From positions 6,758,001 through 6,822,000 of the forward strand of contig NC_135259.1 of the NCBI RefSeq assembly GCF_964204865.1: DNA of 64,000 nucleotides. The letters are read 5' to 3'. A program made the position numbers and the translations under genes. Under the pieces are notes generated by a model. That model saw only the letters and a list, made by a program, of their open reading frames with translations, was not told where the DNA came from and did not search any database. Every line of letters begins with the position of its first letter. Position 1 is the first letter of the stretch. This DNA comes from Styela clava. Taxonomy: Eukaryota. This document shows, piece by piece, positions 8,049 through 54,208 of the stretch.

Positions 8049-10414
8049 TTGAAAAATTAGAATTTGACTCTAGCAGCCTTCACTGCTTTGACACGCGGTT
8101 ACTATGATATATTTTCATTTGAACATTGTAACATTTCCTATGCTCCCAAAGATCAATACCAAGCTTTAAAATGCAGGCAGATACTTAACTAACATTTTTA
8201 TGTCAGTTCGATGTGGGAATATTTAAATTCAAACAGTTTTCCTTTGGTTTGTTTTTTTATTGATATGTATAGGTTCACTCAATCCATACATATCTGGAGA
8301 AAATAGCGAGATGAAGAGTTTCAACCGATCAGTGACGCCTATTGGTTGTTCTTATTCTTATACTAATCGGCTTTCTGTGAAATGCAATTAAGCCGGTTAT
8401 GGAAAGACAAGAGAGAACCAGCCTCTCAGCGACAGGGACACCCCGCGGCATTTGTGTGAAGTGTGCGCACTAAAATCTAAGATTCGAAGGTCGTGGTTTC
8501 AATTTCGATTTTATTATTGACTAATTGCCTTTAAATTATTTTAAAGGTATTCTTTACGCATTAATCATGAACGTGGGCTAATTGTTAGTTCAAAAAATAA
8601 ATTTCGTGTTGCAGATCTCACTGTATTGGCAAGAAGTTACTCTGCAAGCAAAATCTGAAAAATCTAAATTGAACAGAAAGAGATGTAGTCATGTTGCGCT
8701 TCATGATATTATGTAGAACAAATCATGCTGGCCTGACATCTCCGTTCGAAACAGCAGTACTTCTTTTAACACTGCTGGACTCTGATTTATTATTTTACTG
8801 CTTAAAGCAAATGGATGTTTTTTACTGTAGCCAAATATCGCAATGGCAACCGATCTTGTGAAATGATTCTGAATATCAATTTTACATTCCTTAAACGCTA
8901 TAATCAAAGCTCCTATACCTTCAATATTATTGGAATTTGTATTTACTTTTAGGACTCGCATGCCACAGAATGAACTTTTTCTTGTTTTTGAAATTTGCCC
9001 CTATTTTAAGCTTCGTCCTTTTTTGGATTAGTTTTAAATGATTAGTTTAATCAATTGCAAACACTTTCTTCCTAATTACTTAGATTTCTTTGTAGCTTCA
9101 CCCTCATTATCACTCCTGTAATTAAAGCAATCTGTACTAAAATTAAACGGAATCTGAAACCCGAGTTGCAATGAAATAGATTTCAATTTCTTTAAATTTA
9201 GTGTATTGTTGATGGCAGTGGCCAATGTGGTTGAAAGTACTATGGGAAGCACATTTTTACCGTCGTCCTTACTTTCAATTAATAAAGAACAAACAAAAGA
9301 GAATCGGCCCATATGTGGACCTCAGGCATATCAATTGGTTCTATAAATAAATTATACATTTATGCGATAGCAAACACTTGAGGCCGATTTTCATTAAGGA
9401 TTCCTGTGTAAAAATGTGTTTGTTATTGGATTGAAAAATTCAAACTTTTTATTGTCTTTCATTTATTGCTGTAATCACAAATGGCACTGGTAGAAAGTAA
9501 TAGCATTCAAATCAAACGTTATTTTCAAACCATACATATTAGCTGATGTAAAGTAATTTCACTAAATACATAGCATATATTTTACTTTACCACGCTTGTA
9601 CTACCACTCTTGTTTACTATATAGTACAAAATTTTCCAGACAACACATATGTTAGATCTGTTACAGTTCCATATATAAAGTGCATTTAAAGTATTTCCAC
9701 TGAAAAAAAATGACTTAAAATGACTGCCTTCAAGCGACATCGTGGAAAAGAAATACATAATAATTGCAAAAATACTGTAGGTGAATTGGCTGATCAGATT
9801 ATAAAGAACTCTCTCATCAAAATCATTACGTGAGAATTAAGGGCAGGAAATATTGAAGCGTATGATTCTGTTTCTTTTGACTCTATTGCTTCCTTTATTA
9901 CACAAGTATACGTGGATTCTAGAAAAGTTCAAGGTAGCCACTTAGGTTGCCGAGATTTCTAGCACAGCATCTCATATGTATATATATGTTTTACGCGGAT
10001 TTAGTGTAGAATTCAGGCGCTCAAACTTCTCAATTCTGTTGTTATTAGTAATTTTTTCTTGCTTCTAAGAATTGATAATGGACATTATGTAAGACCTTGA
10101 TTGGGATGAAAAAGTGATATCTAAAATGATATGTGCGAATGGAATTGCAATCGCAATACAATTCCAAAAATGTCAATGAATAAATAACAAATAATGTCAA
10201 ACGGCGATAAAAGGAATGACAACTCAAGCAAGTTTGTTAGGTCTGTCAAAAAAAGTACTAGTCCAATAAGAAGTTCACTCCAAATCTGGAAAACGTAGGA
10301 TGTGCATTTTGAAAAACAATTGAATTTTTATTAAACGACTGTAATAAAAAATTTTAAAATATTTTTATTGTTTAGTTTGTTTGGGCATTGAATATTTTCT
10401 TTAACCGAAACGAG

Positions 10415-13400
10415 ATGAATTGGGTAAAACTCATTCTAGTCGTTTTAGTACTTACTCTATCTTGTAAAAATTCGTCTGCCCAGTCTGAAGAAGATTCTCT
10501 AAGATTGGCATGGGCAGTGAGGCGCCTTGTAAGGCCAACTGACTGCAATTCCTCTTCAACGGATCTAGGGCCACCACGTAACTATTATCCAGCGAGACCC
10601 GGTAAAATTGGACCCGTTGGTCCACCTGGCTGCCCTGGTGAGGCTGGGCCGAAAGGCGAAGCAGGATCATGCGTATGTAATCGAACCGAAACAAATGATC
10701 TAAAGCAGATGATACAGAATCTTGAAGGTAATTATTTGTTTTATATTATTTGAAACTAAATATAGTTTTTAAATAAGTCAATAAATAGTTAAATGTATTG
10801 GATATCGAATCGCTGTGATCGTATTTTGGTTGTCATATTATAATCTCATGTCCCATGTATAGTTGTATTGTATTTTTTATATAAAAAAGGTATATGAGAA
10901 TACCTGCCAAACAAAAATTCGATTTTAGTTTCAGCATTTACTTAAAATTCAAATGAATTAGCTTGCCTGACCTAAAGTGGAAAGAGACAGTTTCCAGCCT
11001 TGAAAACATTATCAAACCTTCTTATCACGAATGAAAATTCAAATATATTAATACGGTGACTCTAAGATAACAGAATATTCACCACGACCCTAACCGCACG
11101 GATGTCGCCCAACTTCTACATATTTTGTTATTTCAATTATCCCGTGCTTATATATGTACTCATATTAAGTTTCACTCATGTTTTTCAGATAAAATAAGTA
11201 CTATGGAGTCTCAGATGCCGGGTGCGTAAACAAATAATTTACTATAGAAAGTAGTAGATTAAACGTGAGATAAGCTATTAATTAATATTTTTAGAAGCAT
11301 TTTGTCTGCTTGGAATGAAGAGTGGAATGATACCTGACAGTGCAATAACTGCGTCTTCTGTACATTCTGCATCCTATTGCAAGTTAGCAAATGCAAGACT
11401 AGACCATCACGGTGCTTGGTGCGCGGTTGCAAGTAAGTATTTTATTACAATCTTTCTTTAGTTTCAACTATTGCAAAAATAGAATTTGCTCGTATATTAA
11501 TAATTACTTATTATATACAATAAGTACATACTATATATGTTAAAACCTGAATTTGCAAAATCATGAAGACTAAAATTGCTTATTTGTTGCTAATACCAAC
11601 AACACGAGAAATGGCCTTCTTGAACGTTAGAAAATTGATCGTAACTTTTACAATAGCTATGTGACGCAAATGGACGAAAGTCGTCTTTATCAAGCATTTG
11701 CTTGACGAACAACCATTCAGTATTATTAAAAATAAAAAAGATATATTTCTTCCCAATTAGGTTTAGTATGTTTGGATTTGACATTTTAATTAGTGTATCG
11801 ATTTTTTGTGTTTTAAAGAATATATCAGTATAAACTAACCTCAAAACATGCTATGGGTGTATGTATACTACAGCTCGGGTTCCAAATAGCGACTGTCAAT
11901 AGAGCGACCACACGACAGCGATTAATTAGTTTAAAACAGCGACTGTCAATAGAGCGACTACACTACTGACTACACGACAGCGATTCATTTAAAACAGCGA
12001 CTGTCATAACAGCGACCTCATTTAAAACAGTGGCTGCCACAACAGCGACATCACTTCCCTTATTAAATTGAAGGCTTACGCGCACACGCACTCATTTAAT
12101 TACGTCGCTATTATGAAGTCGCCATTATGACAGTCGCTGTTTTGACAGTCGCTATCCGGCCTGGATACCGTATACTACTTCCAATGATCCTGACCGGCTT
12201 AGTTGAGATATTGTATTAATTCACATTTGAAAATAAAAATAATTATTCTAACCGCAGATACAATTGGGAGTCAGTGGGTTGAAGTAGATCTCGGCAAGAT
12301 TCAAAAAGTGACGGGAGTTGTTACGCAAGGTCAAGGAAATTATCCAAACACAAATGAATGGATTACAAGTTTCAAAATTGAGTATGCTACCAGAGAGGGA
12401 TCAAGGACAGCGTTAACAGAAAATAATAATTACAAGGTAAATAAGTTTTTACAGTATTTCAAATTCAAAAATTAGAAAAATTAGTTGAAATCAAGCTTTC
12501 CTGACCACCCAATCACACATGTCATGTCAACGGAGCCATGCCAATTTTAATGACATATCGCAGCATAAACACTAAACATGTTTACAAGTCCACTGAAACC
12601 AGTCGAGTAGACCAGAAAAGAAACTATTTCACGCTTTACTGGTTTGGGCGTTATTTCAATCTAAACCTTTTGGTCCGCTTCATTGGACCACCTATCGCGG
12701 AAGTTTTTTCGCCAAATGTAATATCGTTTCAGATACATCATAGCAAGTTCTATTTAAACCACCTCTTCTTCGCTTCCACATCTATCGTCTAACTGCTGAA
12801 CACAAATTTGAAATAACGGCCGGTGCGGCGTAATTGTCAGATAGGTGGTTCTGTTTTAAAATATAAAACTAAATCTGATTTGACAATGATTTATTTTTAT
12901 AAAACTGGGTACGGTACAAACTTTGTTGATAAACTGTATTTTGTATTACCAAAATTTTCATAAAAATTTGTAGTGAGAAAATTTGACTGTGGTTACATCA
13001 AATGTGGTTTAATCAAAGCAGAAAATGACATTGAGCGAAAAGCACATTGTGTTGAACGTTAATGCTACGTTACGTGCGAGCTTGTCTCTCAACAAGCCTC
13101 GACTTGATTTGATAATATTCAATATACCAGCTTCGCATTAATAATAAATTGCATGGGGATACATTCTCTCTTTTATCTTATATCAACATATCAGTGTGCG
13201 TCACAACAACAAAAAAAACTGGCAATAAAAGTGGATCGCGAAATGAAATAGATTGAAAAGCACTGCTTTAAATGATAAACTGTCGCTGACAGTAACTAGT
13301 AGTCTACCGTCATTTCTTGAATGAATTGTGTTGTGTAAGGTGCCAGTAATCTTCATCATTGAACTTTCAGCCTAGTCATCGAAATGATTTGACTAAAGTT

Positions 13401-15024
13401 TTTTTCGAATATTTTTTATGTCATTACTTTAATTTGACTTTCTGTTCTTAGATTACGATTACGTGCTCGTCAAAACCGATCCATCGTAATGCAACCTCGA
13501 TTACATGCCCACAACCAATAATATGATAAAAACAGTTTTAGATCTGCTTGAGTGGAGGAAATGAGTCATCACGATTTGCAAACGCACTACATATAATACC
13601 TTTAATAATTTCCGAAATTCAATAAAAAAAATTCCATAAAATTAAGTAAAGTATCAGAATCAGATGCGAGTTGTCTAGAGAATGTTATGTTGCTTTCATG
13701 TTGAATTTATTCTACAACTATTGCCCGACGAATGAATCAGTGACGTGACGTAAATTTAGTTTCGCGAAACATGCTGGTAGTTCAACAGTGCAGAGTACTG
13801 GCACTTTACACCACACGATTCATTAGGTTTCTGTTAGCATGACAATATCGTAATCAAATACGTTTAAATTTTGTCAATCAAGCACTTATTGGGGAGTGAG
13901 ATCATTGCCACATATCATCAGGATCAGGAACAATTCCAGCATTTTAATATCATAATCATAGTACTACTGCTACGTTACCGGCAGTATAACATATTTATAT
14001 GCAGTTACCGTTACAGTATGTACTGGTGACCGTTAGTAAGGTATGGTGAAATTTGGAAAATTTTGTTGATGCAAATTACAGTTCAGAATCGATGGTTGTA
14101 CCGCAATGTATAACAATGAATTTTTAGCATATTCGATTTAATTTTATACAGATTTCGAGACAGAACCACCAATCATGCAATTACGTTGCACTGTCACTCT
14201 ACATTAGGCAAACGGTATTTCAATTTTGAGTTCAACAGTTACACGATAGATTTAGAAGAGTTTAAATTGAACATGCTATGGCATAGCAAAAATTATGTTT
14301 GTCAAAAAAACAATTCGAGTACAAAACATAAAAAATAAAACATCTTAGGTACCTTTTTCGTCAAAGTGGGCAACGGCGATTTCTCGGATATCACAACGAA
14401 GCAACTCAGCAAGAGCGGTGTATCTCATTTTTAGACCTCCTCTATAGGTGGTCTATTGTAGCGAATTGAATGGCTGTATTGAAATTACGCGCGAACCACA
14501 GAAGCGTGAAATAGTTTCTTTCGTGATCTTCTTGACTGGTTTTAGTGGACATATACTCAGGCTCAATTTCTGCAATCAGAAATCACCGATTTAAAATTGC
14601 ATCTAATTTTGAATGTTTACTTAGTATTTGTATTGAATTTCGGAAATTATCAAGATATAAATATATGTAGGCTAGTACGTTTGCAAACAGGGATGACTCA
14701 TTCATTCCAGCCAAGCAGCTTCAGAGCTGTCCTCATCACCTTGGTTGTGGACATGTAATCGAAGGCGCTAAATGGTCTCTGAAACCACTTCGATTTTTCT
14801 GAACCTTCTCAATGGATCGGTTTTGGCGGACATAATCATATCTATTGTATACTCGGGATTTGAATTTCAATATTATATTTCAGGTTTTCTCTCCAGTCAA
14901 TTTCAATAAAAATACAATAGTAGTGACGAGATTCCCAGAACCCATACAAGCGAGGTACATCAGAATCATTCCTGCTTCATACCATAGTCACATGTCGATG
15001 CGTTTCGACGTCATCAATTGTTAG
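10415..15024 (+). CDS. Secreted collagen-like + coiled-coil + F5/8 type C (discoidin) domain protein, 5 exons
   Basis: Exons 10415-10727, 11189-11221, 11295-11432, 12258-12436, 14884-15024, all GT-AG and phase-consistent. Signal peptide MNWVKLILVVLVLTLSC; 8 Gly-X-Y triplets; heptads LKQMIQNLEDKISTME; discoidin motifs CLLGMKSGMIPDSAITASS, ARL..GAWC, QWVEVDLG...VTGVVTQG, WITSFKIEY, ARYIRIIP, SMRFDVINC*. Confidence 0.9.
11872..12170. mobile_element. Foldback/MULE-like MITE with arrays of subterminal ACAGCGAC repeats
   Basis: Left array (ATAGCGACTGTCAA, ACAGCGAC...) is mirrored by right array (GTCGCTGTTTTGACAGTCGCTAT). Direct repeat TATACTAC at 11864-11871 and 12171-12178 (9 bp with the preceding G). 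Confidence 0.65.
13448..14844. mobile_element. Degenerate inverted-repeat-bounded element in last intron of collagen-discoidin gene
   Basis: AAAACCGATCCAT...CGATTACATGCCCACAACCAA (13448-13518) matches in inverted orientation TTGGTTGTGGACATGTAATCG...ATGGATCGGTTTT (14741-14844). Confidence 0.5.
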
Positions 15025-16056
15025 TAGAGCTGGTCTAAATGAAATTGAATATTGCCTCAAAATTGAATTTAATCTGCAAATATTTCAGTTATTTACAATT
15101 TTACATCCCCAACAGCATAGGTTTTAACTCGTTGAATACTACTGATAAGTTGTTCCTTAACATTGCAAACTTAGTACTTTTCATTGTCATCCTTGGCGAC
15201 CCAAGGTCAAACCAAAATCACCACTGAAAGTTGAAGAAGTCCTTTTTATAAGATGTGTCACAATACCTGTCGTTGGAGCTGTCCTGCGTTAATTTCGTCT
15301 GGAATATATTTTTGCATAGTTTCAAATTCTTGTAATAAGTCTCACAATGATATTATTGATGTTTCAATCATCCACGTACGTATCTCAATTTCAAGATTTT
15401 TGAGTTTCTAAGCAAATATTTCAATAGAGGTATTTTTTTTTTTTGGTAGAATAGTTAATTTATTAGTCGACAGATTTCTTGTAGATTTATCATTTTTAAT
15501 ATTGGAGTCACGCATCCGTGGGGAATGCATTTTTTTCAGCAGCGACCCCTAAACTATACAATACCTAAATACATTATCGATAGAAATATTCATAAAAGTC
15601 AGACCTAGGATCCTGCTTTGTGTCTATTAATGTTATGAGTTCTCTCTGTTTATTTTCCCTCTATATTCAATACCAAACAGAAAACAATATATATTTTGGA
15701 TACTGCATTCTTATTTGACAAAAGTGCAGTCTCGAATAGCATAAACGTATAATGGGAAATGTATAAATACAAATATACTAAACAACAACAATTTTGTCTT
15801 TTGTAAAGAAAAATAGTTTGACTCAGAGCTGTTGATATGACATTCATCTTAATCTTATATCACTTAAAAGAAGGTCATGTACAACCCATGTGTAAGGACT
15901 ATGTTTTTTTGAAAAATCCAGGATTTTATCAATTCCACAGACCCTGTTTAATTTATCGTATTCTGGTAGAAGTAGCGACCATTCCATATAAACCCAACAC
16001 TTTCAAACTACCTCCCAGCTCAACATGCGCAAACGCTTTGTCACAAATAATTGCGT

Positions 16057-19000
16057 TCATGATTTTTTGGGATTTCGTTTGTTATTTCGCGATCGTTTAT
16101 AGGTATCGGTTTTACTACGGCCATATTTTGGTCTAGCTTGTCTCTGATCCTCTCCGTTTGTATAAGTTGATGATTCTCTTTTGTCGTTTGATTTACCATT
16201 GGATCTTTTGGAGGTCATTTTCTCCTCTTCTACCCCTCTTTTACTTCTTTTATTTACCCGTTTTCCTTCTTCAAATTTGCGAGAACTGGATGAAGCATTT
16301 TCCCTCCGTCTTTGTTTTTCCCGATTTTCATGTCGTGTTTTGCTAGTTTTAATTCTTGATAACTCTGTGTCTTCTTCTTGTTTTATTCTTCGTTTATAAT
16401 AATCTCGTTCTCTTGTGGGTTTCCTTCTTTTATAGTCATTTTTTTCATGCCTTCTTGTATGTATTTTCTCTTCTTTCAACTCGTCTTTTTTATTAATTTT
16501 TTCATTATGATTTATATCACGATATGAGGCATTATTCTTCAACTTCTCATCATTTTTATCATTATGGGCAGTGAATTTAGTATCATACTTTTCTGTAATT
16601 TTTTTACCGCAATTCGAGTTTTTTGCAATAGGATCTTCAGGAATTTGATTGGTAGTGATTTGATGTTTAGGCTCTATCATCTCGTAATTGTGAGAATGAT
16701 ATCTCTGTGAAACTTGATTTGAATTCTGTTCTTCTTTAACCATTACGGATCTCGTGATGTCATGTATTTCTGTGTCGTCAGCAATTTCTTTCTTCTTTTT
16801 ATTTTTTCGCCTATTAAAATTAAAAAAGCTACAATGCGCTCATTCATAGGCAAAAGGAAAAGCCCGAATTAAATTATCGCTCATTTAATCGTTTTGATCT
16901 GCCATATAAAATAGGTGCACCAACCCATATTGTATTTGATATTAAGTAAAAAATCATAGCCTTTTTTATCAAACTATCCAAAAATGACCTTGATAACGAA
17001 CGCTCAAAAAAAGATCGATCGAACAATACCTCCTTATTTTGTATGCTGCAAACATCAAAACTGCAGCTACAAGTACAACCGCAACAATGATTGCAATATA
17101 TTTGGCAGTATTCATACCACTGCTCCCTTCGGCTTGTTTTTCAGTCGTCTTAGGTACATTCCTATATCCTGGATAAAGCGTTCGAGTAGGAGGTCTTCGT
17201 GCTGAAAGGCAAATAACGATAATTATGAATAGTATGATAATTGGCCGGATAATCCTGAAACTTACTTCGTAGATGAATACATTTGTTATCGGGTAGTGTT
17301 GAAAAATTTACTTCTTTGTTTTCACGTATTTTTATGTTTTTTAATTTGTGTTGAAAAACTAAACCCTACTTTGATAGTAAAAGTTCCCAAATTTAAAAAC
17401 TCTCTTACTTTTCACTACGATTGGCCTTTTTATGATCCGTTTTGGTGGAATCCATCTTCCTGGAAATGTGGTGGGCCTATGAAATGACGTAACAAATGAT
17501 TTTGTGATTTGACTTATTATATTGTGATTTGCTTCAGGGAAGAAAAGCGTGTTTATAGAAAAGTTTATTATAGGTTTTGTGAGCTTGGGCTTACCTTCGT
17601 TTTAAACAAGTGTCAACTCAATAAATAATTCAATGTTCGTCGACTTCTTTCTATCTCAATGCTATCATAATTGTTTTTTTTATCGATGGAAATGATTTTA
17701 AATGCTTGGCATTAGAGCATACTCAAAGCATATGTAGTAGAGTTTACTTTTCTATGAGGTATTTAACACCTTCATTCTGATAAATTCTCTGAATAGGTAG
17801 CTATGTAAAATGCTCACGATTGTTAGGCCGAAATTAAAATAAGCTTTAATTTACTTGAGAGTAGGCTGAAACTTTTGGGGAACTGGCTTCGCTGGAGTAA
17901 CAAAATTTTCGACTTTTCTTTCGTCATTTGCTTTATCATTTTTTAAATTTTTCAGCTGATTTCTGCGGTTTATACTTTCATTGTCGTTATCGTCAATAGT
18001 GTCATCCGTTGGCATGAGAGATGGCGCTACAGTGGCGCTTGGAACAAAATATTTTCTCCAGAGACCAGCTTTATCCCGCACTGATATAAAAAAAAGAAAA
18101 TTTTATATTTAGTTTTATATTTTAGTTTATATTTATTTAGATCTTTCTTCACTTTAAAATGTCATCAACTAAACTGTAGTTACATTTAATGCTTTTAAAC
18201 AATACCAATTACAGTATTTTTCCGTATTTTTATATAAACATACCATACACATGAACAATATCTTATACTCAAGAGCCAATGTAAAAAACACAGACATCTA
18301 GGTGGAGATACTTTATAATTTAAACTAAAAAATCGTAATTACTTACATACTTCAGATGTAGGTTCAGTAGTTTGAGTGTATGTAAACTTAAAACCTCTGT
18401 AAGGAATTCCAATATCTACGGAATCCGATTCCAGTTTGATTCGTAGGGTGTTAGCTGTAGGCATAAAAAATTAGATATATTTAATCTTTGCGAAGAAATG
18501 ATGATAAATATCATATCAGTAACAAACGGAAATGGTAAAATAGAAGTTTAAAAGCATGTGATGGCAAACGATGATGAGATGGTCACGAATATGGCTGAGG
18601 ATGAGTGTGGGGTTTTGTGTGGTAATGAAGTAGTTCGCAATGGATTACTTGGAGTGATTTATTTTTAGGCTTGTTCATGGGGCATATTTAACTGTCCCAT
18701 TCCCATCCCACCGCATAGCAAATATGCCTGTCCCCTCCCATCCCATGTGATTCCCATTGGAATACAATTAAATAAAAATTCTTTCCGGTTTCGAGTCTAC
18801 TGAATAGGACTACATGTACGAAGAGACATGCGAAAAAATAAAGTTTAGGGACTTTGTCAAGTTCATATTCATAACTATTATACATGTGTCCATCAGCCCG
18901 TTCACGAAGTATATTGTTAATGCTGAATATATTTTTCTCTTTATAACTAACAAGAGAGCTATGCTTTAATATATGGACACGAAATCCATAACGAAATGTT

Positions 19001-51115: not shown

Positions 51116-52537
51116 TCTTATAGTGTATGTACATATACAAAAACTTTTTGTATGCTGTAATAAGTTTTCTGGTGGTTTTTGCATGTTTGAGCTTGATAAA
51201 TGACAAACACTGATCAATGTGTTTGCACAAAAAAGTGTTTGCTATGTATTTCTCTGTTTACCTATTCTCCATATCCAACAAACCGTGCTGTCGGACGACG
51301 TAAAAAGGCATGGCACAATGAAATAATGAGTACCGGTAAAGCGTTGGAAGTTTCTGCTCGTTGTATAATATGATCATTGTACCGGAATACATTGTTTGCA
51401 TTTGATACTGGGTTTTTTGAAGCATGCTACTGCTAGTGCTACTCAACATGATCCTAATCCGGAACGTTGAAATGTTCAGTTCCACTCGTGACTGTTATCG
51501 TTGTTTGTATTGGATTACATGATTAGCTGCTTAGAAGGGTGATTCCGTGAGGCGTGGTTAAAAAATATTGTATATTGTGCAGAAGAAAGAACTCTTTTGC
51601 ACTGATTCACAACCGAAAGAAATTGAGGCGTCATAATTAGAGCGATGTAGCAGCGCGCACAATGGATGTCAATTTGTTTTTTTGGTTAACTTTTGGCTAA
51701 AATTTATACGCACCATCTTGGATTACGGTACTCGGTTCATTTTACTTGTTCAACTTGCAAGAATCTGTTCAAGAAGGCTAATTTTCAATTTTAGCTTACA
51801 GGTTTTGGTAAACACTTCTGAGTAGCCTATAAGCGTTTTGATAGTATTGTACATTTTTCGCACCTGCCTTTTCAGACTTGTTTCCTGTGAGTTCATAAAA
51901 CCCACACTGATATTACAGTAATAGGTCAAGACAATGAGAAAACTTGGTGAGCTATGGCTATGAGCTAAACCTATGGCTTAGATTTTAAGCAATTATTACC
52001 GGGATACGGTCTTAATTTCTGTCGTTTTGTATAAAGAATATTGGGAACCCCTAATCTTAGATAAAAAATTTCCATTCCAATTAATTTTTCGATGCTTTAG
52101 ATATTGGAACCGTGGGTTTCTGCTCGCAGGTTTGATAACTATCCTCGATTCCTCGCTGCTTTCTTTCGATTTGTTCTCCCGTAATATTATCTTTGACTTT
52201 TTCTCCTAGTTTGCTATACTGTTGTTTTTATATTTCACTGATATATACTGAAACGTTTCTCAACATGCCAATGAAGCCTATTCTTTGGCCATGAATTTTA
52301 TTTCTGCGAAACATGTGGCGTTACGCACCCTCTATATCTTTCCAGTTACATTTTTTTGAATGCTTGAGATTTAGTTGCTGCGTTTGCGAAATAATTCGGC
52401 ATCTACAACGTTTTGATATACAATGATTAAACAAAATCAATACAATGATAAACTTCTGGCTTCCATTTTTATTACACAACAGTGGACAATATATCGCTAT
52501 TTCATGTTTCCACAGCCTAATAAGCTCTAATATCAAG

Positions 52538-54208
52538 ATGGAGCATTCCAACAAAAATAGTGATGATTGTGAAAAAATTGAAAAGATCTCAAAAGTTGAA
52601 GAATTGGAAGAATTGGGATTTCCGTCTGATTTTATTATCAAAGTCGAAGAATTTTCTTTTCCTGTACATCGAGTAATCATAGCTGCTGCATCTAACTATT
52701 TTCGTCTTATTCTGTCTAGTCAGATGAAGGAATCTAAAGATGGTTGTGTTGATATGGAGGAAGTTGACCCACATGCAATCAAGAAATGCATTGCTTTTAT
52801 GTACCATTCAGAAATGCCAATTGCTCTTACTGAAATAGAGGACGTTATTCACGCTTCCAAACTAATAAACTTGGATAGACTTGCTGAAAAATGTTTCTAT
52901 CAATTAAACCAAGAGTTATCTCCAGATACTTGCATTGTGTCATTGAAGTTAGCCAAGTTGTATAATCGAAACCAGTATGAGTTACAAAATTATATTTTAA
53001 AGAACTTCAGAGCTATAGTTGCCTCTGATATGTTTCCATATATAGATCATGATGATCTAGTAGATTATATCGAATTTTTCAGTGCAGGTGAAGATACCGA
53101 AAGAATTAAGTGGGAAGCAATTACAAAGTGGGTAAAATTTCAATCGGATCGAAAAGACAATTTCCCCAGCCTTTTTCAGCTCATGAACCTGGATCTGCTA
53201 AGTCCACAATTTCTTCAAGAAAGCGTACGAACCGATCCACTTGTGAACGACTCCGTGGACTGTATGAATATTATGATGGAAAGTTTACTTCCACATACAA
53301 AATTGCGACAAAACATCATGAATAACACAGCAACAACCCCAAAAAATATTCATATAGCATGCTTGAACCTACGTGAGGGTTCAATTGATGCCTTCAATGT
53401 GCGGTCAAAGGGATGGTGTCGCATTTCTGGTTCTCCTATAACAGGACAATACAAGTTTGGCAGTATTTGTAGTTGTCTATATATTCTGGGTTATAATGGT
53501 GATTTCTTCATATTTGACAATAAAAGAGAAACATGGATTCGCAAACCAAGTGGAAGTCCTCATTACGAACACTTTTTTGTAATTGAGTTTCAAGGCAAAC
53601 TATTTGTGCTTGTAAAGCATCACACTTTATGCTATGATCCCATTCAAGAAATGTGGGAAGCTGAACGTCTGCCTGGTTGTCGGCTACGGTTCTTCTGTGC
53701 CGCCTCTTCTGAAGATTTTATTTATTCAGTCGGAGGTGCAATTGGGACTTTTTGCCAGTGGGATCAAGCAAGAAGATATGACCCGCTACGTAAGAGATGG
53801 GCAAAAATTGCTTCCATGAATAAAGAACGAAATGGATCAGCAGCGGCGTATGCCTGTGAAAAGTTGTATGTACTGGGCGGAGAATGGGACAAGAAATACC
53901 TGAGTACAGTAGAATGCTACAACCCGGATACTAACACTTGGACTAGTATTACAAATATGTGTGTAACGAGGGATGATCCTACAACTTGCGTCTCCGATGA
54001 TAAGATATATGTCGTCGGAGGAGCTAGGGATGAGGATGGCAATCCCGAACAAGATAATTCTATAGAATTATATGACGTAATTTCAGGCAAATGGGCTATT
54101 ATCTCAAAAGGCAGAATATACCCCGGACTCGTGCAATCATGCATTTATCCGAAGGATAGGCTCTCATCTGGGAATTCGGTAGAATCAGGGGGATGTAAGA
54201 CGCAATAA
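52538..54208 (+). CDS. BTB-BACK-Kelch (kelch-like) protein, intronless CDS
   Basis: SDFIIKV...FPVHRVIIAAASNYFR...MKES (BTB), then BACK, then Kelch repeats (IYSVGG...RYDP...W, LYVLGG...VECYNPDTNTW, IYVVGG...ELYD...W). Start placed at ATG 52538 because a strong acceptor TTTCCACAG ends at 52515; the ORF track start 52445 is probably intronic. AATAAA near 54407. Confidence 0.92.
   Translation: MEHSNKNSDDCEKIEKISKVEELEELGFPSDFIIKVEEFSFPVHRVIIAAASNYFRLILSSQMKESKDGCVDMEEVDPHAIKKCIAFMYHSEMPIALTEIEDVIHASKLINLDRLAEKCFYQLNQELSPDTCIVSLKLAKLYNRNQYELQNYILKNFRAIVASDMFPYIDHDDLVDYIEFFSAGEDTERIKWEAITKWVKFQSDRKDNFPSLFQLMNLDLLSPQFLQESVRTDPLVNDSVDCMNIMMESLLPHTKLRQNIMNNTATTPKNIHIACLNLREGSIDAFNVRSKGWCRISGSPITGQYKFGSICSCLYILGYNGDFFIFDNKRETWIRKPSGSPHYEHFFVIEFQGKLFVLVKHHTLCYDPIQEMWEAERLPGCRLRFFCAASSEDFIYSVGGAIGTFCQWDQARRYDPLRKRWAKIASMNKERNGSAAAYACEKLYVLGGEWDKKYLSTVECYNPDTNTWTSITNMCVTRDDPTTCVSDDKIYVVGGARDEDGNPEQDNSIELYDVISGKWAIISKGRIYPGLVQSCIYPKDRLSSGNSVESGGCKTQ

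What the first reader, a model, noticed from the sequence alone, without database searches (positions are those of the whole stretch)
10415..15024. Collectin/ficolin-like 'defence collagen' with a discoidin head and a MASP-docking motif: candidate new lectin-pathway recognition molecule
Seen: signal peptide, an N-terminal Cys (PTDC), 8 Gly-X-Y triplets beginning RP-GKI-GPV-GPP (PGKIGP at 10598-10615), a CxC, an alpha-helical heptad neck (LKQMIQNLEDKISTME) and one F5/8 type C domain. Established: collectins have the layout Cys/collagen/neck/recognition domain (ficolins are similar, without the neck) but use C-type lectin or fibrinogen heads. Their MASP-binding site is Hyp-Gly-Lys-Xaa-Gly-Pro with aliphatic Xaa. 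Ascidians have MASPs and C3, and discoidin domains can bind galactosides or anionic phospholipids. Inference: this may be a third head type plugged into the lectin complement pathway. Automated pipelines would probably label it only 'lactadherin/retinoschisin-like'. Caveat: the motif sits at the very start of a short triple helix.
Basis: partly seen in the sequence, partly recalled or inferred. Interest (0 to 1): 0.82.

Follow-up and report, generated by a model that had tools for sequence, protein, structure and literature searches.

The report
Collagen-stalked discoidin lectin of a sea squirt
This is an expressed sea-squirt (Styela clava) gene for a small secreted protein that joins a short collagen stalk and a coiled-coil neck to a discoidin head. 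It belongs to a family of at least 20 such genes whose stalks all keep the lysine motif that vertebrate collectins and ficolins use to dock their complement protease, but that docking is untested here.

Summary
Window 10415-15024 (+) is a five-exon gene. Spliced RNA contigs from three studies support all four introns. The product is identical to RefSeq XP_039261035.2, "lactadherin-like [Styela clava]", 267 aa. Its layout is signal peptide, Cys44, P-G-K-I-G-P opening eight Gly-X-Y triplets, C-x-C, a three-heptad neck, and one F5/8 type C domain.

A three-copy model passes its controls (score 0.39, best control 0.02). Its contacts lie along the collagen and the heptad positions.

The genome holds at least 19 further collagen-discoidin loci. 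The motif lysine is invariant in all 20. It is essentially the only X-position lysine in the 18 stalks tallied. The next residue is Arg in nearly all paralogs, and Ile (polymorphic to Thr) only here.

Ficolin-like genes of the same genome share the stalk layout and carry G-K-(A/R)-G-P. A MASP-type gene with intact CUB calcium/lysine pockets is also present.

The architecture, the motif conservation and the preconditions hold. MASP binding, ligand and tissue are untested, and the motif sits next to the N-terminal hub.

The scan noted the same family on other pieces of this genome (s1-809863, s1-817498, s1-815983).

Verdict: new variant of a known kind, interest 0.6.

The parts
10415..10727 (+). 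Exon 1: start codon, signal peptide, N-terminal region, whole collagen run, C-x-C and the first half of the neck. Ends in phase 1.
   Evidence: Translation. Donor confirmed by spliced contigs. Identical to P0156 residues 1-104.
10415..10483 (+). Probable signal peptide, residues 1 to about 23.
   Evidence: Hydrophobic core LILVVLVLTL seen. Inferred; no predictor was run.
10544..10546 (+). Cys44 (PTDC), the only N-terminal cysteine of the mature chain. Candidate inter-chain or inter-trimer link.
   Evidence: Its role is inferred.
10598..10615 (+). P-G-K-I-G-P, the MASP-binding-type motif. Lys64 is in the X position of the first Gly-X-Y triplet.
   Evidence: G-K is invariant in 20 loci. 10608 T>C gives Ile65Thr in the contigs of runs X1 and X5.
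10601..10672 (+). Collagen-like run of 8 Gly-X-Y triplets, residues 63-86, with a Cys at residue 73.
   Evidence: Pfam Collagen 19-21 bits, below cut-off. In the three-copy model, residues 60-89 of all copies touch.
10670..10678 (+). C-V-C (Cys86, Cys88) at the collagen/neck junction. Probable inter-chain disulfide knot.
   Evidence: The C-x-C is shared by the C16-type paralogs. Its role is inferred.
10682..10727 (+). Neck, first part (residues 90-104).
   Evidence: Helix 90-113 in the monomer model. Trimer contacts at residues 93, 96, 100 and 103.
11189..11221 (+). Exon 2: second part of the neck (residues 105-115).
   Evidence: Spliced contigs. Trimer contacts at residues 107 and 110.
11295..11432 (+). 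Exon 3: start of the discoidin domain. Holds Cys119 (the partner of Cys267) and an extra pair, Cys146/Cys158.
   Evidence: Cys119 and Cys267 are invariant in alignment A3.
12258..12436 (+). Exon 4: core of the discoidin domain.
   Evidence: Pfam F5_F8_type_C, E 1.5e-9. Spliced contigs.
14884..15024 (+). Exon 5: end of the discoidin domain and the TAG stop.
   Evidence: Pfam F5_F8_type_C, E 8.9e-7. Spliced contigs.
15025..15600 (+). 3' untranslated region, at least to 15600. The contig of run X5 runs about 850 bases further.
   Evidence: table 8, record 13.

Best explanation
The gene encodes a secreted protein that assembles into a homotrimer. The assembly runs through an eight-triplet collagen helix, clamped by a C-x-C knot, and a three-heptad coiled-coil neck. 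This presents three discoidin (F5/8 type C) heads on one face, as collectins present their lectin domains.

It is one member of a fast-diverging family of at least 20 genes in Styela clava. The most likely role is a humoral multivalent recognition protein, an agglutinin or opsonin, for a surface ligand. The ligand could be a glycan or an anionic lipid and is not determined.

The conserved Pro-Gly-Lys-(Arg/Ile)-Gly-Pro at the base of the stalk is most probably a docking site for a partner. The CUB domains of the MASP-type protease are the leading candidate.

Shown here: gene structure, transcription, domain content, the family, and conservation of the motif.
Supported by a model only: the trimer.
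Inferred: secretion, higher oligomers, ligand, immune role, and any MASP docking.

My odds: trimeric secreted discoidin protein about 0.85; humoral recognition, agglutinin or opsonin role about 0.6; MASP docking and complement activation about 0.3.
For: - Gene and transcript.
- Domains.
- Trimer: score 0.39, best of 3 controls 0.02. The mark was reached by 21 of 30 proteins solved as pairs of one chain and by 0 of 23 solved as single chains. The runs agree in at least 63% of contacts, and partner pLDDT is at least 80. The interface is residues 60-89 plus heptad positions 93/96/100/103/107/110.
- Head: closest to FVIII C2, lactadherin C2, FV C2 and neuropilin b1.
- Family: 19 further collinear collagen-discoidin loci, many in tandem clusters and only 30-55% identical. 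This pattern is typical of recognition families.
- Motif: K is 18/18 in the tallied set, plus 2 more loci. P(-2) is 17/18 and R(+1) is 16/18. Other X/Y columns have 1.35-2.97 bits of entropy.
- Lysine positions: the motif Lys is the only X-position Lys in 17 of 18 stalks, and 29 other Lys are all in Y. PMC2856262 describes the same pattern for MBL and ficolins.
- Ficolin-like genes of the same genome share the stalk layout.
- A Styela clava 'lactadherin' has been published as an agglutinating glycoprotein. Only the title was seen.
Against: - No tissue, challenge or protein data were available. The runs are coded, and contigs cannot rank expression.
- The ligand cannot be read from the sequence. 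The neuropilin b1 pocket residues, which I give from memory, do not look conserved in the alignment.
- The monomer model is only moderately confident (mean pLDDT 62.6).
- The trimer test was calibrated on two copies and mostly on microbes, and may pass from memory of collagen or coiled-coil folds.
- I could not establish that the published S. clava lactadherin is a member of this family.
Confidence: 0.6

Rival explanations
1. The protein is a lectin-pathway recognition molecule. Oligomers of trimers dock the CUB1-EGF-CUB2 region of a Styela MASP through Lys64 in a calcium-dependent way. Ligand binding by the discoidin heads then activates MASP and deposits C3.
For: [quoted passage not shown]
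- According to PMC2856262, only the Lys is essential. The next residue tolerates small polar side chains, and Pro can be Ala. This covers the Ile/Thr polymorphism and the P/S/A variants in paralogs.
- The Lys is invariant in 20 loci and is the only X-position Lys.
- Ficolin-like genes of the same genome carry PGKAGP or PGKRGP at the same place.
- A gene with CUB-cEGF-CUB-Sushi-Trypsin order lies at G000:C8:17361150-17370250. Its CUB1 best matches MASP-1, and the acidic calcium/lysine pocket residues appear kept. The human residue numbers are from my memory.
Against: - The residue after Lys is Arg in 16 of 18 paralogs. This was never tested for MASP binding and occurs in no vertebrate motif I know.
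- The motif is in triplet 1-2, directly after the N-terminal cysteines. Stalks of a bouquet would converge there and leave little room. The authors of PMC2856262 placed their engineered site five triplets below the kink to give the MASP space.
- The stalk has only 8-9 triplets.
- MASP binding needs two to four stalks, and higher oligomers are not shown.
[quoted passage not shown] So protochordate MASP docking need not use this site.
- No binding model could be run.
Confidence: 0.3
2. The protein is an extracellular-matrix, tunic or cell-adhesion protein in the manner of retinoschisin, lactadherin or CTHRC1. The collagen stalk serves only to trimerise it. The basic R-P-G-K-R patch serves folding or matrix binding: triple-helix nucleation or stability, a chaperone site of the (T/P)-G-X-R-G type, or binding of sulfated glycans and other polyanions.
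For: - The nearest solved heads are membrane- or matrix-binding discoidin domains.
- Short collagen modules trimerise many non-immune proteins (general knowledge).
- In the paralogs the conserved block is strongly basic (R at -3, K at 0, R at +1), as in heparin-binding sites of collagen tails (from memory). Pro-Gly-X-Arg-Gly also fits the HSP47 site (from memory).
- The tunic is rich in sulfated polysaccharides (one search lists a chondroitin sulfate from the S. clava tunic).
Against: - This gene itself has Ile or Thr, not Arg, and has no Gly-X-Arg triplet at all. Yet it keeps the Lys, so the chaperone or basic-patch idea does not explain what is invariant.
- Large, tandemly expanded, rapidly diverging families point to recognition rather than structure.
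- The same stalk is used by ficolin-like genes.
Confidence: 0.15
3. The Lys-Arg pair marks a proprotein-convertase cleavage site. Cleavage would release the trimer from its cysteine-rich N-terminal piece.
For: A dibasic K-R preceded by R at -3 is conserved in most paralogs.
Against: - P4 is Pro, not Arg, so it is not a furin consensus.
- The site lies inside the triple helix.
- This gene has K-I or K-T, and several ficolin-like genes have K-A. The dibasic pair is therefore not the conserved feature.
Confidence: 0.03

Closest known systems
Ficolins (vertebrate ficolin-1/-2/-3, and the ficolin-like gene arrays of this same genome)
   Same: - The order of parts: signal peptide, Cys-containing N-terminus, short collagen run, globular head.
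- A G-K-x-G-P lysine in the X position. S. clava ficolin-like genes have PGKAGP or PGKRGP in triplet 1-3, a Cys pair after the collagen and a heptad neck, the same layout as here.
   Different: - The head is F5/8 type C, not fibrinogen C-terminal.
- Sequence similarity of the stalks is weak and mostly collagen-driven (pairwise E 1e-4 to 6e-6). A shared origin of the stalk exon is therefore plausible but not proven.
Collectins (MBL, CL-K1/CL-11, SP-D)
   Same: - Cys/collagen/alpha-helical neck/recognition head, assembled as trimers.
[quoted passage not shown]
   Different: - No C-type lectin domain.
- 8 triplets, against about 20 or more in collectins (from memory).
- The motif is at the very start of the helix rather than mid-stalk.
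Lactadherin (MFG-E8), coagulation factor V/VIII C domains, neuropilin b1
   Same: The head is a canonical metazoan discoidin domain, about 30% identical, with Foldseek probability 1.0. RefSeq names the gene lactadherin-like.
   Different: - No EGF domains, a single discoidin domain, and no Arg-Gly-Asp in the printed sequence.
- A collagen stalk and neck that none of these have. The name reflects one domain only.
Retinoschisin and Dictyostelium discoidins
   Same: Small secreted or soluble oligomeric proteins built around one discoidin domain. Discoidins are trimeric lectins (from memory).
   Different: Their oligomerisation uses an RS1 domain with disulfides, or an H-type lectin domain, not collagen plus coiled coil.
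Styela clava 'lactadherin', an agglutinating glycoprotein (Guo, Dou and Dong 2019, pmid 31140104)
   Same: Same species, same database name, and a reported agglutinating activity. This is what a multivalent discoidin trimer would do.
   Different: Only the title was seen, in a reference list. The paper is not held. Whether it describes this gene, a paralog or an unrelated discoidin protein, and whether a collagen stalk was noticed, is unknown.
Collagenous lectins purified from Styela plicata (Nair 2000; Green 2006, cited in PMC5465252)
   Same: Collagen-containing humoral lectins from the same genus.
   Different: Known to me only as citations. No sequence link to this family was tested.

Membership tests
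F5/8 type C (discoidin) domain proteins | A match to the family profile above the curated cut-off. | tested here: met
   PF00754 86.3 bits against a 28.2-bit cut-off, residues 133-262. The exon-wise hits also exceed the cut-off.
F5/8 type C (discoidin) domain proteins | First and last cysteines that close the domain, and a beta-sandwich fold. | tested here: met
   Cys119 and Cys267 are invariant in alignment A3. The model head aligns to FVIII C2 and lactadherin C2 with TM 0.70-0.74 on the target.
Lactadherin / MFG-E8 orthologue | N-terminal EGF domain(s), one with an integrin-binding Arg-Gly-Asp, followed by two discoidin domains. | tested here: not met
   Pfam finds one discoidin domain and no EGF. 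There is no Arg-Gly-Asp in the printed sequence.
Collectins | A C-type lectin recognition domain after collagen and neck. | tested here: not met
   No Lectin_C hit. The head is F5/8 type C.
Ficolins | A fibrinogen C-terminal domain after the collagen. | tested here: not met
   No Fibrinogen_C hit in P0156. It is present in the ficolin-like neighbours of other stalk exons.
Lectin-pathway recognition molecules (functional class) | A collagen-like stalk that forms a triple helix. | tested here: met
   8 Gly-X-Y triplets. The three-copy model scores 0.39 against a best control of 0.02, with contacts along residues 60-89. This is model support only.
Lectin-pathway recognition molecules (functional class) | [quoted passage not shown] | tested here: met
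   P-G-K-I-G-P at residues 62-67. The Lys is invariant in 20 loci. Hydroxylation of Pro62 was not testable.
Lectin-pathway recognition molecules (functional class) | Assembly of two or more trimers, so that several stalks meet one MASP dimer. | not testable with these tools
   Cys44 and Cys73 could link trimers, but only a single trimer was modelled.
Lectin-pathway recognition molecules (functional class) | Calcium-dependent binding of a MASP and activation of C3. | not testable with these tools
   A MASP-type gene exists. It is available only as separate exons, so no complex could be modelled, and no bench data exist.
MASP/C1r/C1s proteases (for the candidate partner at G000:C8:17361150-17370250) | The domain order CUB-EGF-CUB-CCP-CCP-serine protease. 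| tested here: met
   Collinear open frames hit CUB, CUB, cEGF (PF12662), CUB, CUB, Sushi and Trypsin. The second CCP was seen by eye only. The best single-domain PDB match of CUB1 is MASP-1.

The most novel reading that the evidence does not exclude
Styelid ascidians have a further class of lectin-pathway recognition molecules. One stalk module (Cys, Hyp-Gly-Lys-X-Gly-Pro, 8-9 triplets, Cys pair, coiled-coil neck) has been combined by exon shuffling with different heads. Discoidin-headed trimers as well as ficolins would then dock MASP through the invariant lysine and trigger C3 deposition on ligands that C-type lectin and fibrinogen heads do not see, for example anionic lipids or galactosides.
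Probability: 0.27. Interest if true: 0.8.

Novelty: new variant of a known kind. Interest (0 to 1): 0.6.

Why it matters
Recognition molecules known to start complement use three heads: C-type lectin, fibrinogen-like and C1q. A discoidin head on the same kind of stalk would widen what the lectin pathway can sense. It would also show that the stalk with its protease-docking lysine is a portable module. That bears on how the pathway was assembled in the closest relatives of vertebrates.

The claim is directly testable: express the protein, mutate one lysine, and pull down the Styela MASP.

Even if MASP docking fails, a family of at least 20 genes hidden under the label 'lactadherin-like' is a concrete candidate for the collagenous humoral lectins purified from Styela decades ago. 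It is also a natural design for trimeric display of discoidin domains.

Tried and rejected
- Word search with exon 1 found nothing. The length window of 57-182 aa excludes the full protein.
- The large profile search with exon 4 of 17 paralogs was swamped by proteins with many discoidin domains. Only P0139 and P0143 were useful. It says nothing about how widely the family is spread.
- The ESM Atlas search on the stalk alone returned only generic collagens below 0.9. On the paralog P0139 it returned one 'lactadherin-like' chordate cluster of 59 members.
- Rejected as MASP:
  - C8:22.16 Mb and C6:9.29 Mb are CUB-CUB-protease without EGF or CCP.
  - C2:23.98 Mb is a CUB/LDLa mosaic protease.
  - C3:25.33 Mb is CUB plus TIL-like.
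- Six further CUB or protease loci gave no clear MASP order with simple pattern checks.
- A model of the stalk with MASP CUB domains was not run.
- The spliced model of the finding itself was searched exon by exon by reference. The joined sequence was never typed. The full-length protein was used only as P0156 after a search returned it.
- Guo et al. 2019 could not be read.
- Literature searches for collagen plus discoidin in tunicates found no description of this architecture.
- P0066, a 1109-aa metagenomic protein with collagen and five discoidin domains, is an unrelated combination.
- The convertase-site and HSP47-site readings of the motif were considered. They were judged unable to explain the invariant Lys.
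Full report
**What is there.** Reading 10200-15300 and translating by reference gives a five-exon gene on the + strand. The exons are 10415-10727, 11189-11221, 11295-11432, 12258-12436 and 14884-15024, with GT..AG introns in phases 1, 1, 1 and 0. Contigs of four public runs from three studies join exactly these exons, so the gene is transcribed and spliced as modelled. The same runs show a long 3' untranslated region. They also show several allelic differences in exon 1, among them 10608 T>C, which changes the motif from P-G-K-I-G-P to P-G-K-T-G-P.

I searched the spliced model exon by exon by reference and never typed the joined sequence. A later search returned the RefSeq protein XP_039261035.2, 'lactadherin-like [Styela clava]', 267 aa (P0156). 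It is identical to the model, and from then on I used it by its id. The organism is therefore the ascidian Styela clava. The assembly has 377 Mb in 380 contigs, and the window is C13:6758001-6822000.

**Anatomy.** P0156 has these parts, in order:
- A hydrophobic N-terminus.
- Cys44.
- P-G-K-I-G-P at residues 62-67, which opens eight Gly-X-Y triplets (63-86, with Cys73 inside).
- C-V-C at residues 86-88.
- A helix at residues 90-113, with hydrophobic residues at 96, 100, 103, 107 and 110.
- An F5/8 type C domain at residues 133-262 (E 2.5e-24), closed by Cys119 and Cys267.

The collagen run is too short to reach Pfam's cut-off (19-21 bits against 27.2).

The head is an ordinary metazoan discoidin domain. 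Foldseek ranks factor VIII C2, lactadherin C2, factor V C2 and neuropilin b1 first, at about 30% identity. phmmer against the PDB agrees. Nothing in these comparisons tells the ligand.

**Trimer.** Three copies of residues 56-267 were folded beside controls.
- The score was 0.39, and the best of 3 controls was 0.02.
- The mark was reached by 21 of 30 proteins solved as pairs of one chain and by 0 of 23 proteins solved as single chains.
- The runs agree in at least 63% of their contacts, and the partner's pLDDT is at least 80.
- The confident contacts are residues 60-89 of all three copies, plus 93, 96, 97, 100, 103, 104, 107, 110 and 111. That is the collagen run and the a/d positions of the neck.

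The tool warns that its calibration used two copies and mostly microbes, and that a pass may come from memory of similar folds. I take it as support for a collectin-like trimer, not as proof.

**A family, not a single gene.** Searching the genome with exons 1, 4 and 5 gives co-located, collinear hits at many places. I fetched them and found 19 further loci with the order stalk exon, then three discoidin exons:
- seven on C16;
- seven in a cluster at C13:14.72-14.79 Mb;
- two on C18;
- one each on C9, C17, C1 and C6.

Nine of the loci have RefSeq or UniRef proteins, all named lactadherin-like or retinoschisin-like. The paralogs are only 30-55% identical to this gene.

One relative, 60% identical to P0139, comes from an assembled public run of unknown species (P0152). 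No collagen-discoidin protein from another phylum turned up. My searches were too shallow to claim absence: the Branchiostoma and Exaiptasia hits lack collagen, and the large search was swamped by multi-domain proteins.

**The motif.**
- I anchored the stalks of 18 loci on the lysine. K is 18/18, Pro at -2 is 17/18 and Arg at +1 is 16/18. All other X/Y columns of the collagen run carry 1.35-2.97 bits of entropy.
- The two loci fetched later also read R-P-G-K-R-G.
- The motif lysine is the only X-position lysine in 17 of 18 stalks. The other 29 lysines all sit in the Y position.
- PMC2856262 notes exactly this distribution for MBL and ficolins. Y-position lysines are hydroxylated and glycosylated, which leaves one free lysine for the protease.
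- The same paper states that only the lysine is essential. The next residue is usually aliphatic, serine is tolerated, glutamate is not, and the following proline can be alanine.
- By that rule the Ile and Thr alleles of this gene and the P/S/A variants of the paralogs are acceptable. Arg, the commonest residue in the family, is untested.
- One database protein of the C13 cluster type (P0162) has Glu in place of the lysine and a shorter run.

**Ficolins and MASP in the same genome.** Many other hits of exon 1 lie in tandem arrays on C6, C19, C13:16.5 Mb and C10. At the four I opened, the stalk exon is followed by fibrinogen C-terminal exons (Pfam E down to 3e-30). These are therefore ficolin-like genes. 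Their stalks have 7-14 triplets, and G-K-A-G-P or G-K-R-G-P sits in triplet 1-3. At least one also has a Cys pair and a heptad neck. The layout is thus shared between the two head types. The sequence similarity of the stalks is weak and largely collagen-driven, so common descent of the stalk exon is plausible but not shown.

A gene with the MASP domain order lies at G000:C8:17361150-17370250. Its open frames hit CUB (two exons), a complement C1r-like EGF, CUB, Sushi and Trypsin. A second CCP is visible by eye. Its CUB1 aligns best, as a single domain, with the N-terminus of MASP-1. The acidic residues and the Asp-x-Ser/Thr of both CUB calcium sites appear conserved. The comparison with the human residue numbers is from my memory. 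Several other CUB-plus-protease loci were opened and rejected.

**What speaks against canonical MASP docking.**
- The motif lies in the first or second triplet, directly after the N-terminal cysteines of most paralogs. This gene is unusual: it lacks that Cys pair and has Cys44 eighteen residues upstream.
- If trimers are joined at their N-termini, the lysines of different stalks would sit almost at the hub. In MBL they lie mid-stalk. The authors of PMC2856262 placed their engineered site five triplets below the kink to give the MASP room.
- MASP binding needs two to four stalks, and no evidence on higher oligomers exists here.
- In ascidians, the only lectin shown to work with MASP is a C-type lectin of Halocynthia. 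By my memory it has no collagen.
- Other readings of a conserved basic patch are possible: polyanion binding, a chaperone site, or helix stability. None of them explains why the lysine is invariant while the arginine is not. This gene has no Gly-X-Arg triplet at all.

**Function.** I found no tissue or challenge data. The runs are coded, and contigs cannot rank expression. Tandem expansion and fast divergence suggest a recognition family.

[quoted passage not shown] It is cited by an endostyle cell atlas for a marker of zone-7 cells. The paper is not held, so I do not know whether it concerns this family. Collagenous humoral lectins were purified from Styela plicata. A link to this family is a lead only.

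**Verdict.** The architecture, the trimer (by model), the conserved free lysine, the parallel with ficolins of the same genome and the presence of a MASP all fit. Binding, oligomer state, ligand and expression are open, and the position of the motif is a real structural objection.

I file it as a new variant of a known kind: defence collagens with a discoidin head. It is already annotated, but only as 'lactadherin-like'.

The first-stage scan noted the same family elsewhere in this genome (s1-809863, s1-817498, s1-815983, s1-810918). It also noted related stalk motifs on other heads. These are unchecked notes. My own loci confirm that the family exists, but I could not map the notes to loci.

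Noticed in passing
window 10347-10376: RNA contigs stop matching the genome at an AG near 10374-10375. In run X5 they carry a 21-base leader that is not in the window; run X6 has a different 255-base upstream piece. This may be spliced-leader trans-splicing or an upstream non-coding exon (table 7).
   Followed up: no
window 11877-12170 (intron 3): A short element with inverted-repeat ends built from repeated 'cagcgac...' units. Many unrelated contigs with loose ends pile up here and internal deletions are seen. It looks like a dispersed MITE-like repeat.
   Followed up: no
window about 13452-13526 (intron 4): RefSeq isoform X2 (P0180, 245 aa, named 'discoidin, CUB and LCCL domain-containing protein 2-like') replaces exon 5 with an alternative terminal exon here. 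This would truncate the discoidin domain. Only low-depth contigs cover the place.
   Followed up: partly
window 10435-10608 (exon 1): Exon 1 carries about ten allelic differences between runs, including L13V, L15I, S24A, L29I and I65T by my codon count. Exons 3-5 show almost none.
   Followed up: partly
window 52445-54208 (+): A single open frame of 587 aa that looks like a BTB/BACK/Kelch-repeat protein, judged by eye. Not scanned.
   Followed up: no
window 16057-16743 (-): An open frame of 228 aa, very rich in Lys, Arg and Glu. It lies where the long 3' end of the X5 transcript contig would reach, so convergent overlapping transcripts are possible.
   Followed up: no
L045/L046 = G000:C8:17357500-17371500: A MASP-architecture gene (CUB-cEGF-CUB-Sushi-Sushi-Trypsin). 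Further CUB and Trypsin hits nearby, at C8:17.30-17.35 Mb, suggest a small cluster.
   Followed up: partly
L006, L030, L031, L032 and the arrays around them (C6:23.13-23.31 Mb, C19:5.33-6.0 Mb, C13:16.51-16.54 Mb, C10:7.9-8.04 Mb): Large tandem arrays of ficolin-like genes with very short collagen stalks that start with G-K-(A/R)-G-P. At least one also has a coiled-coil neck, unlike vertebrate ficolins.
   Followed up: partly
L035/L036 = G000:C2:23983500-23999000: A mosaic protease gene with alternating CUB and LDL-receptor class A modules, a discoidin-like exon and a trypsin domain, judged by eye.
   Followed up: no
protein P0066 (metagenomic, 1109 aa): An unrelated protein from metagenomes that combines 27 collagen triplets with five discoidin domains. 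The pairing of the two domains has therefore arisen more than once.
   Followed up: partly
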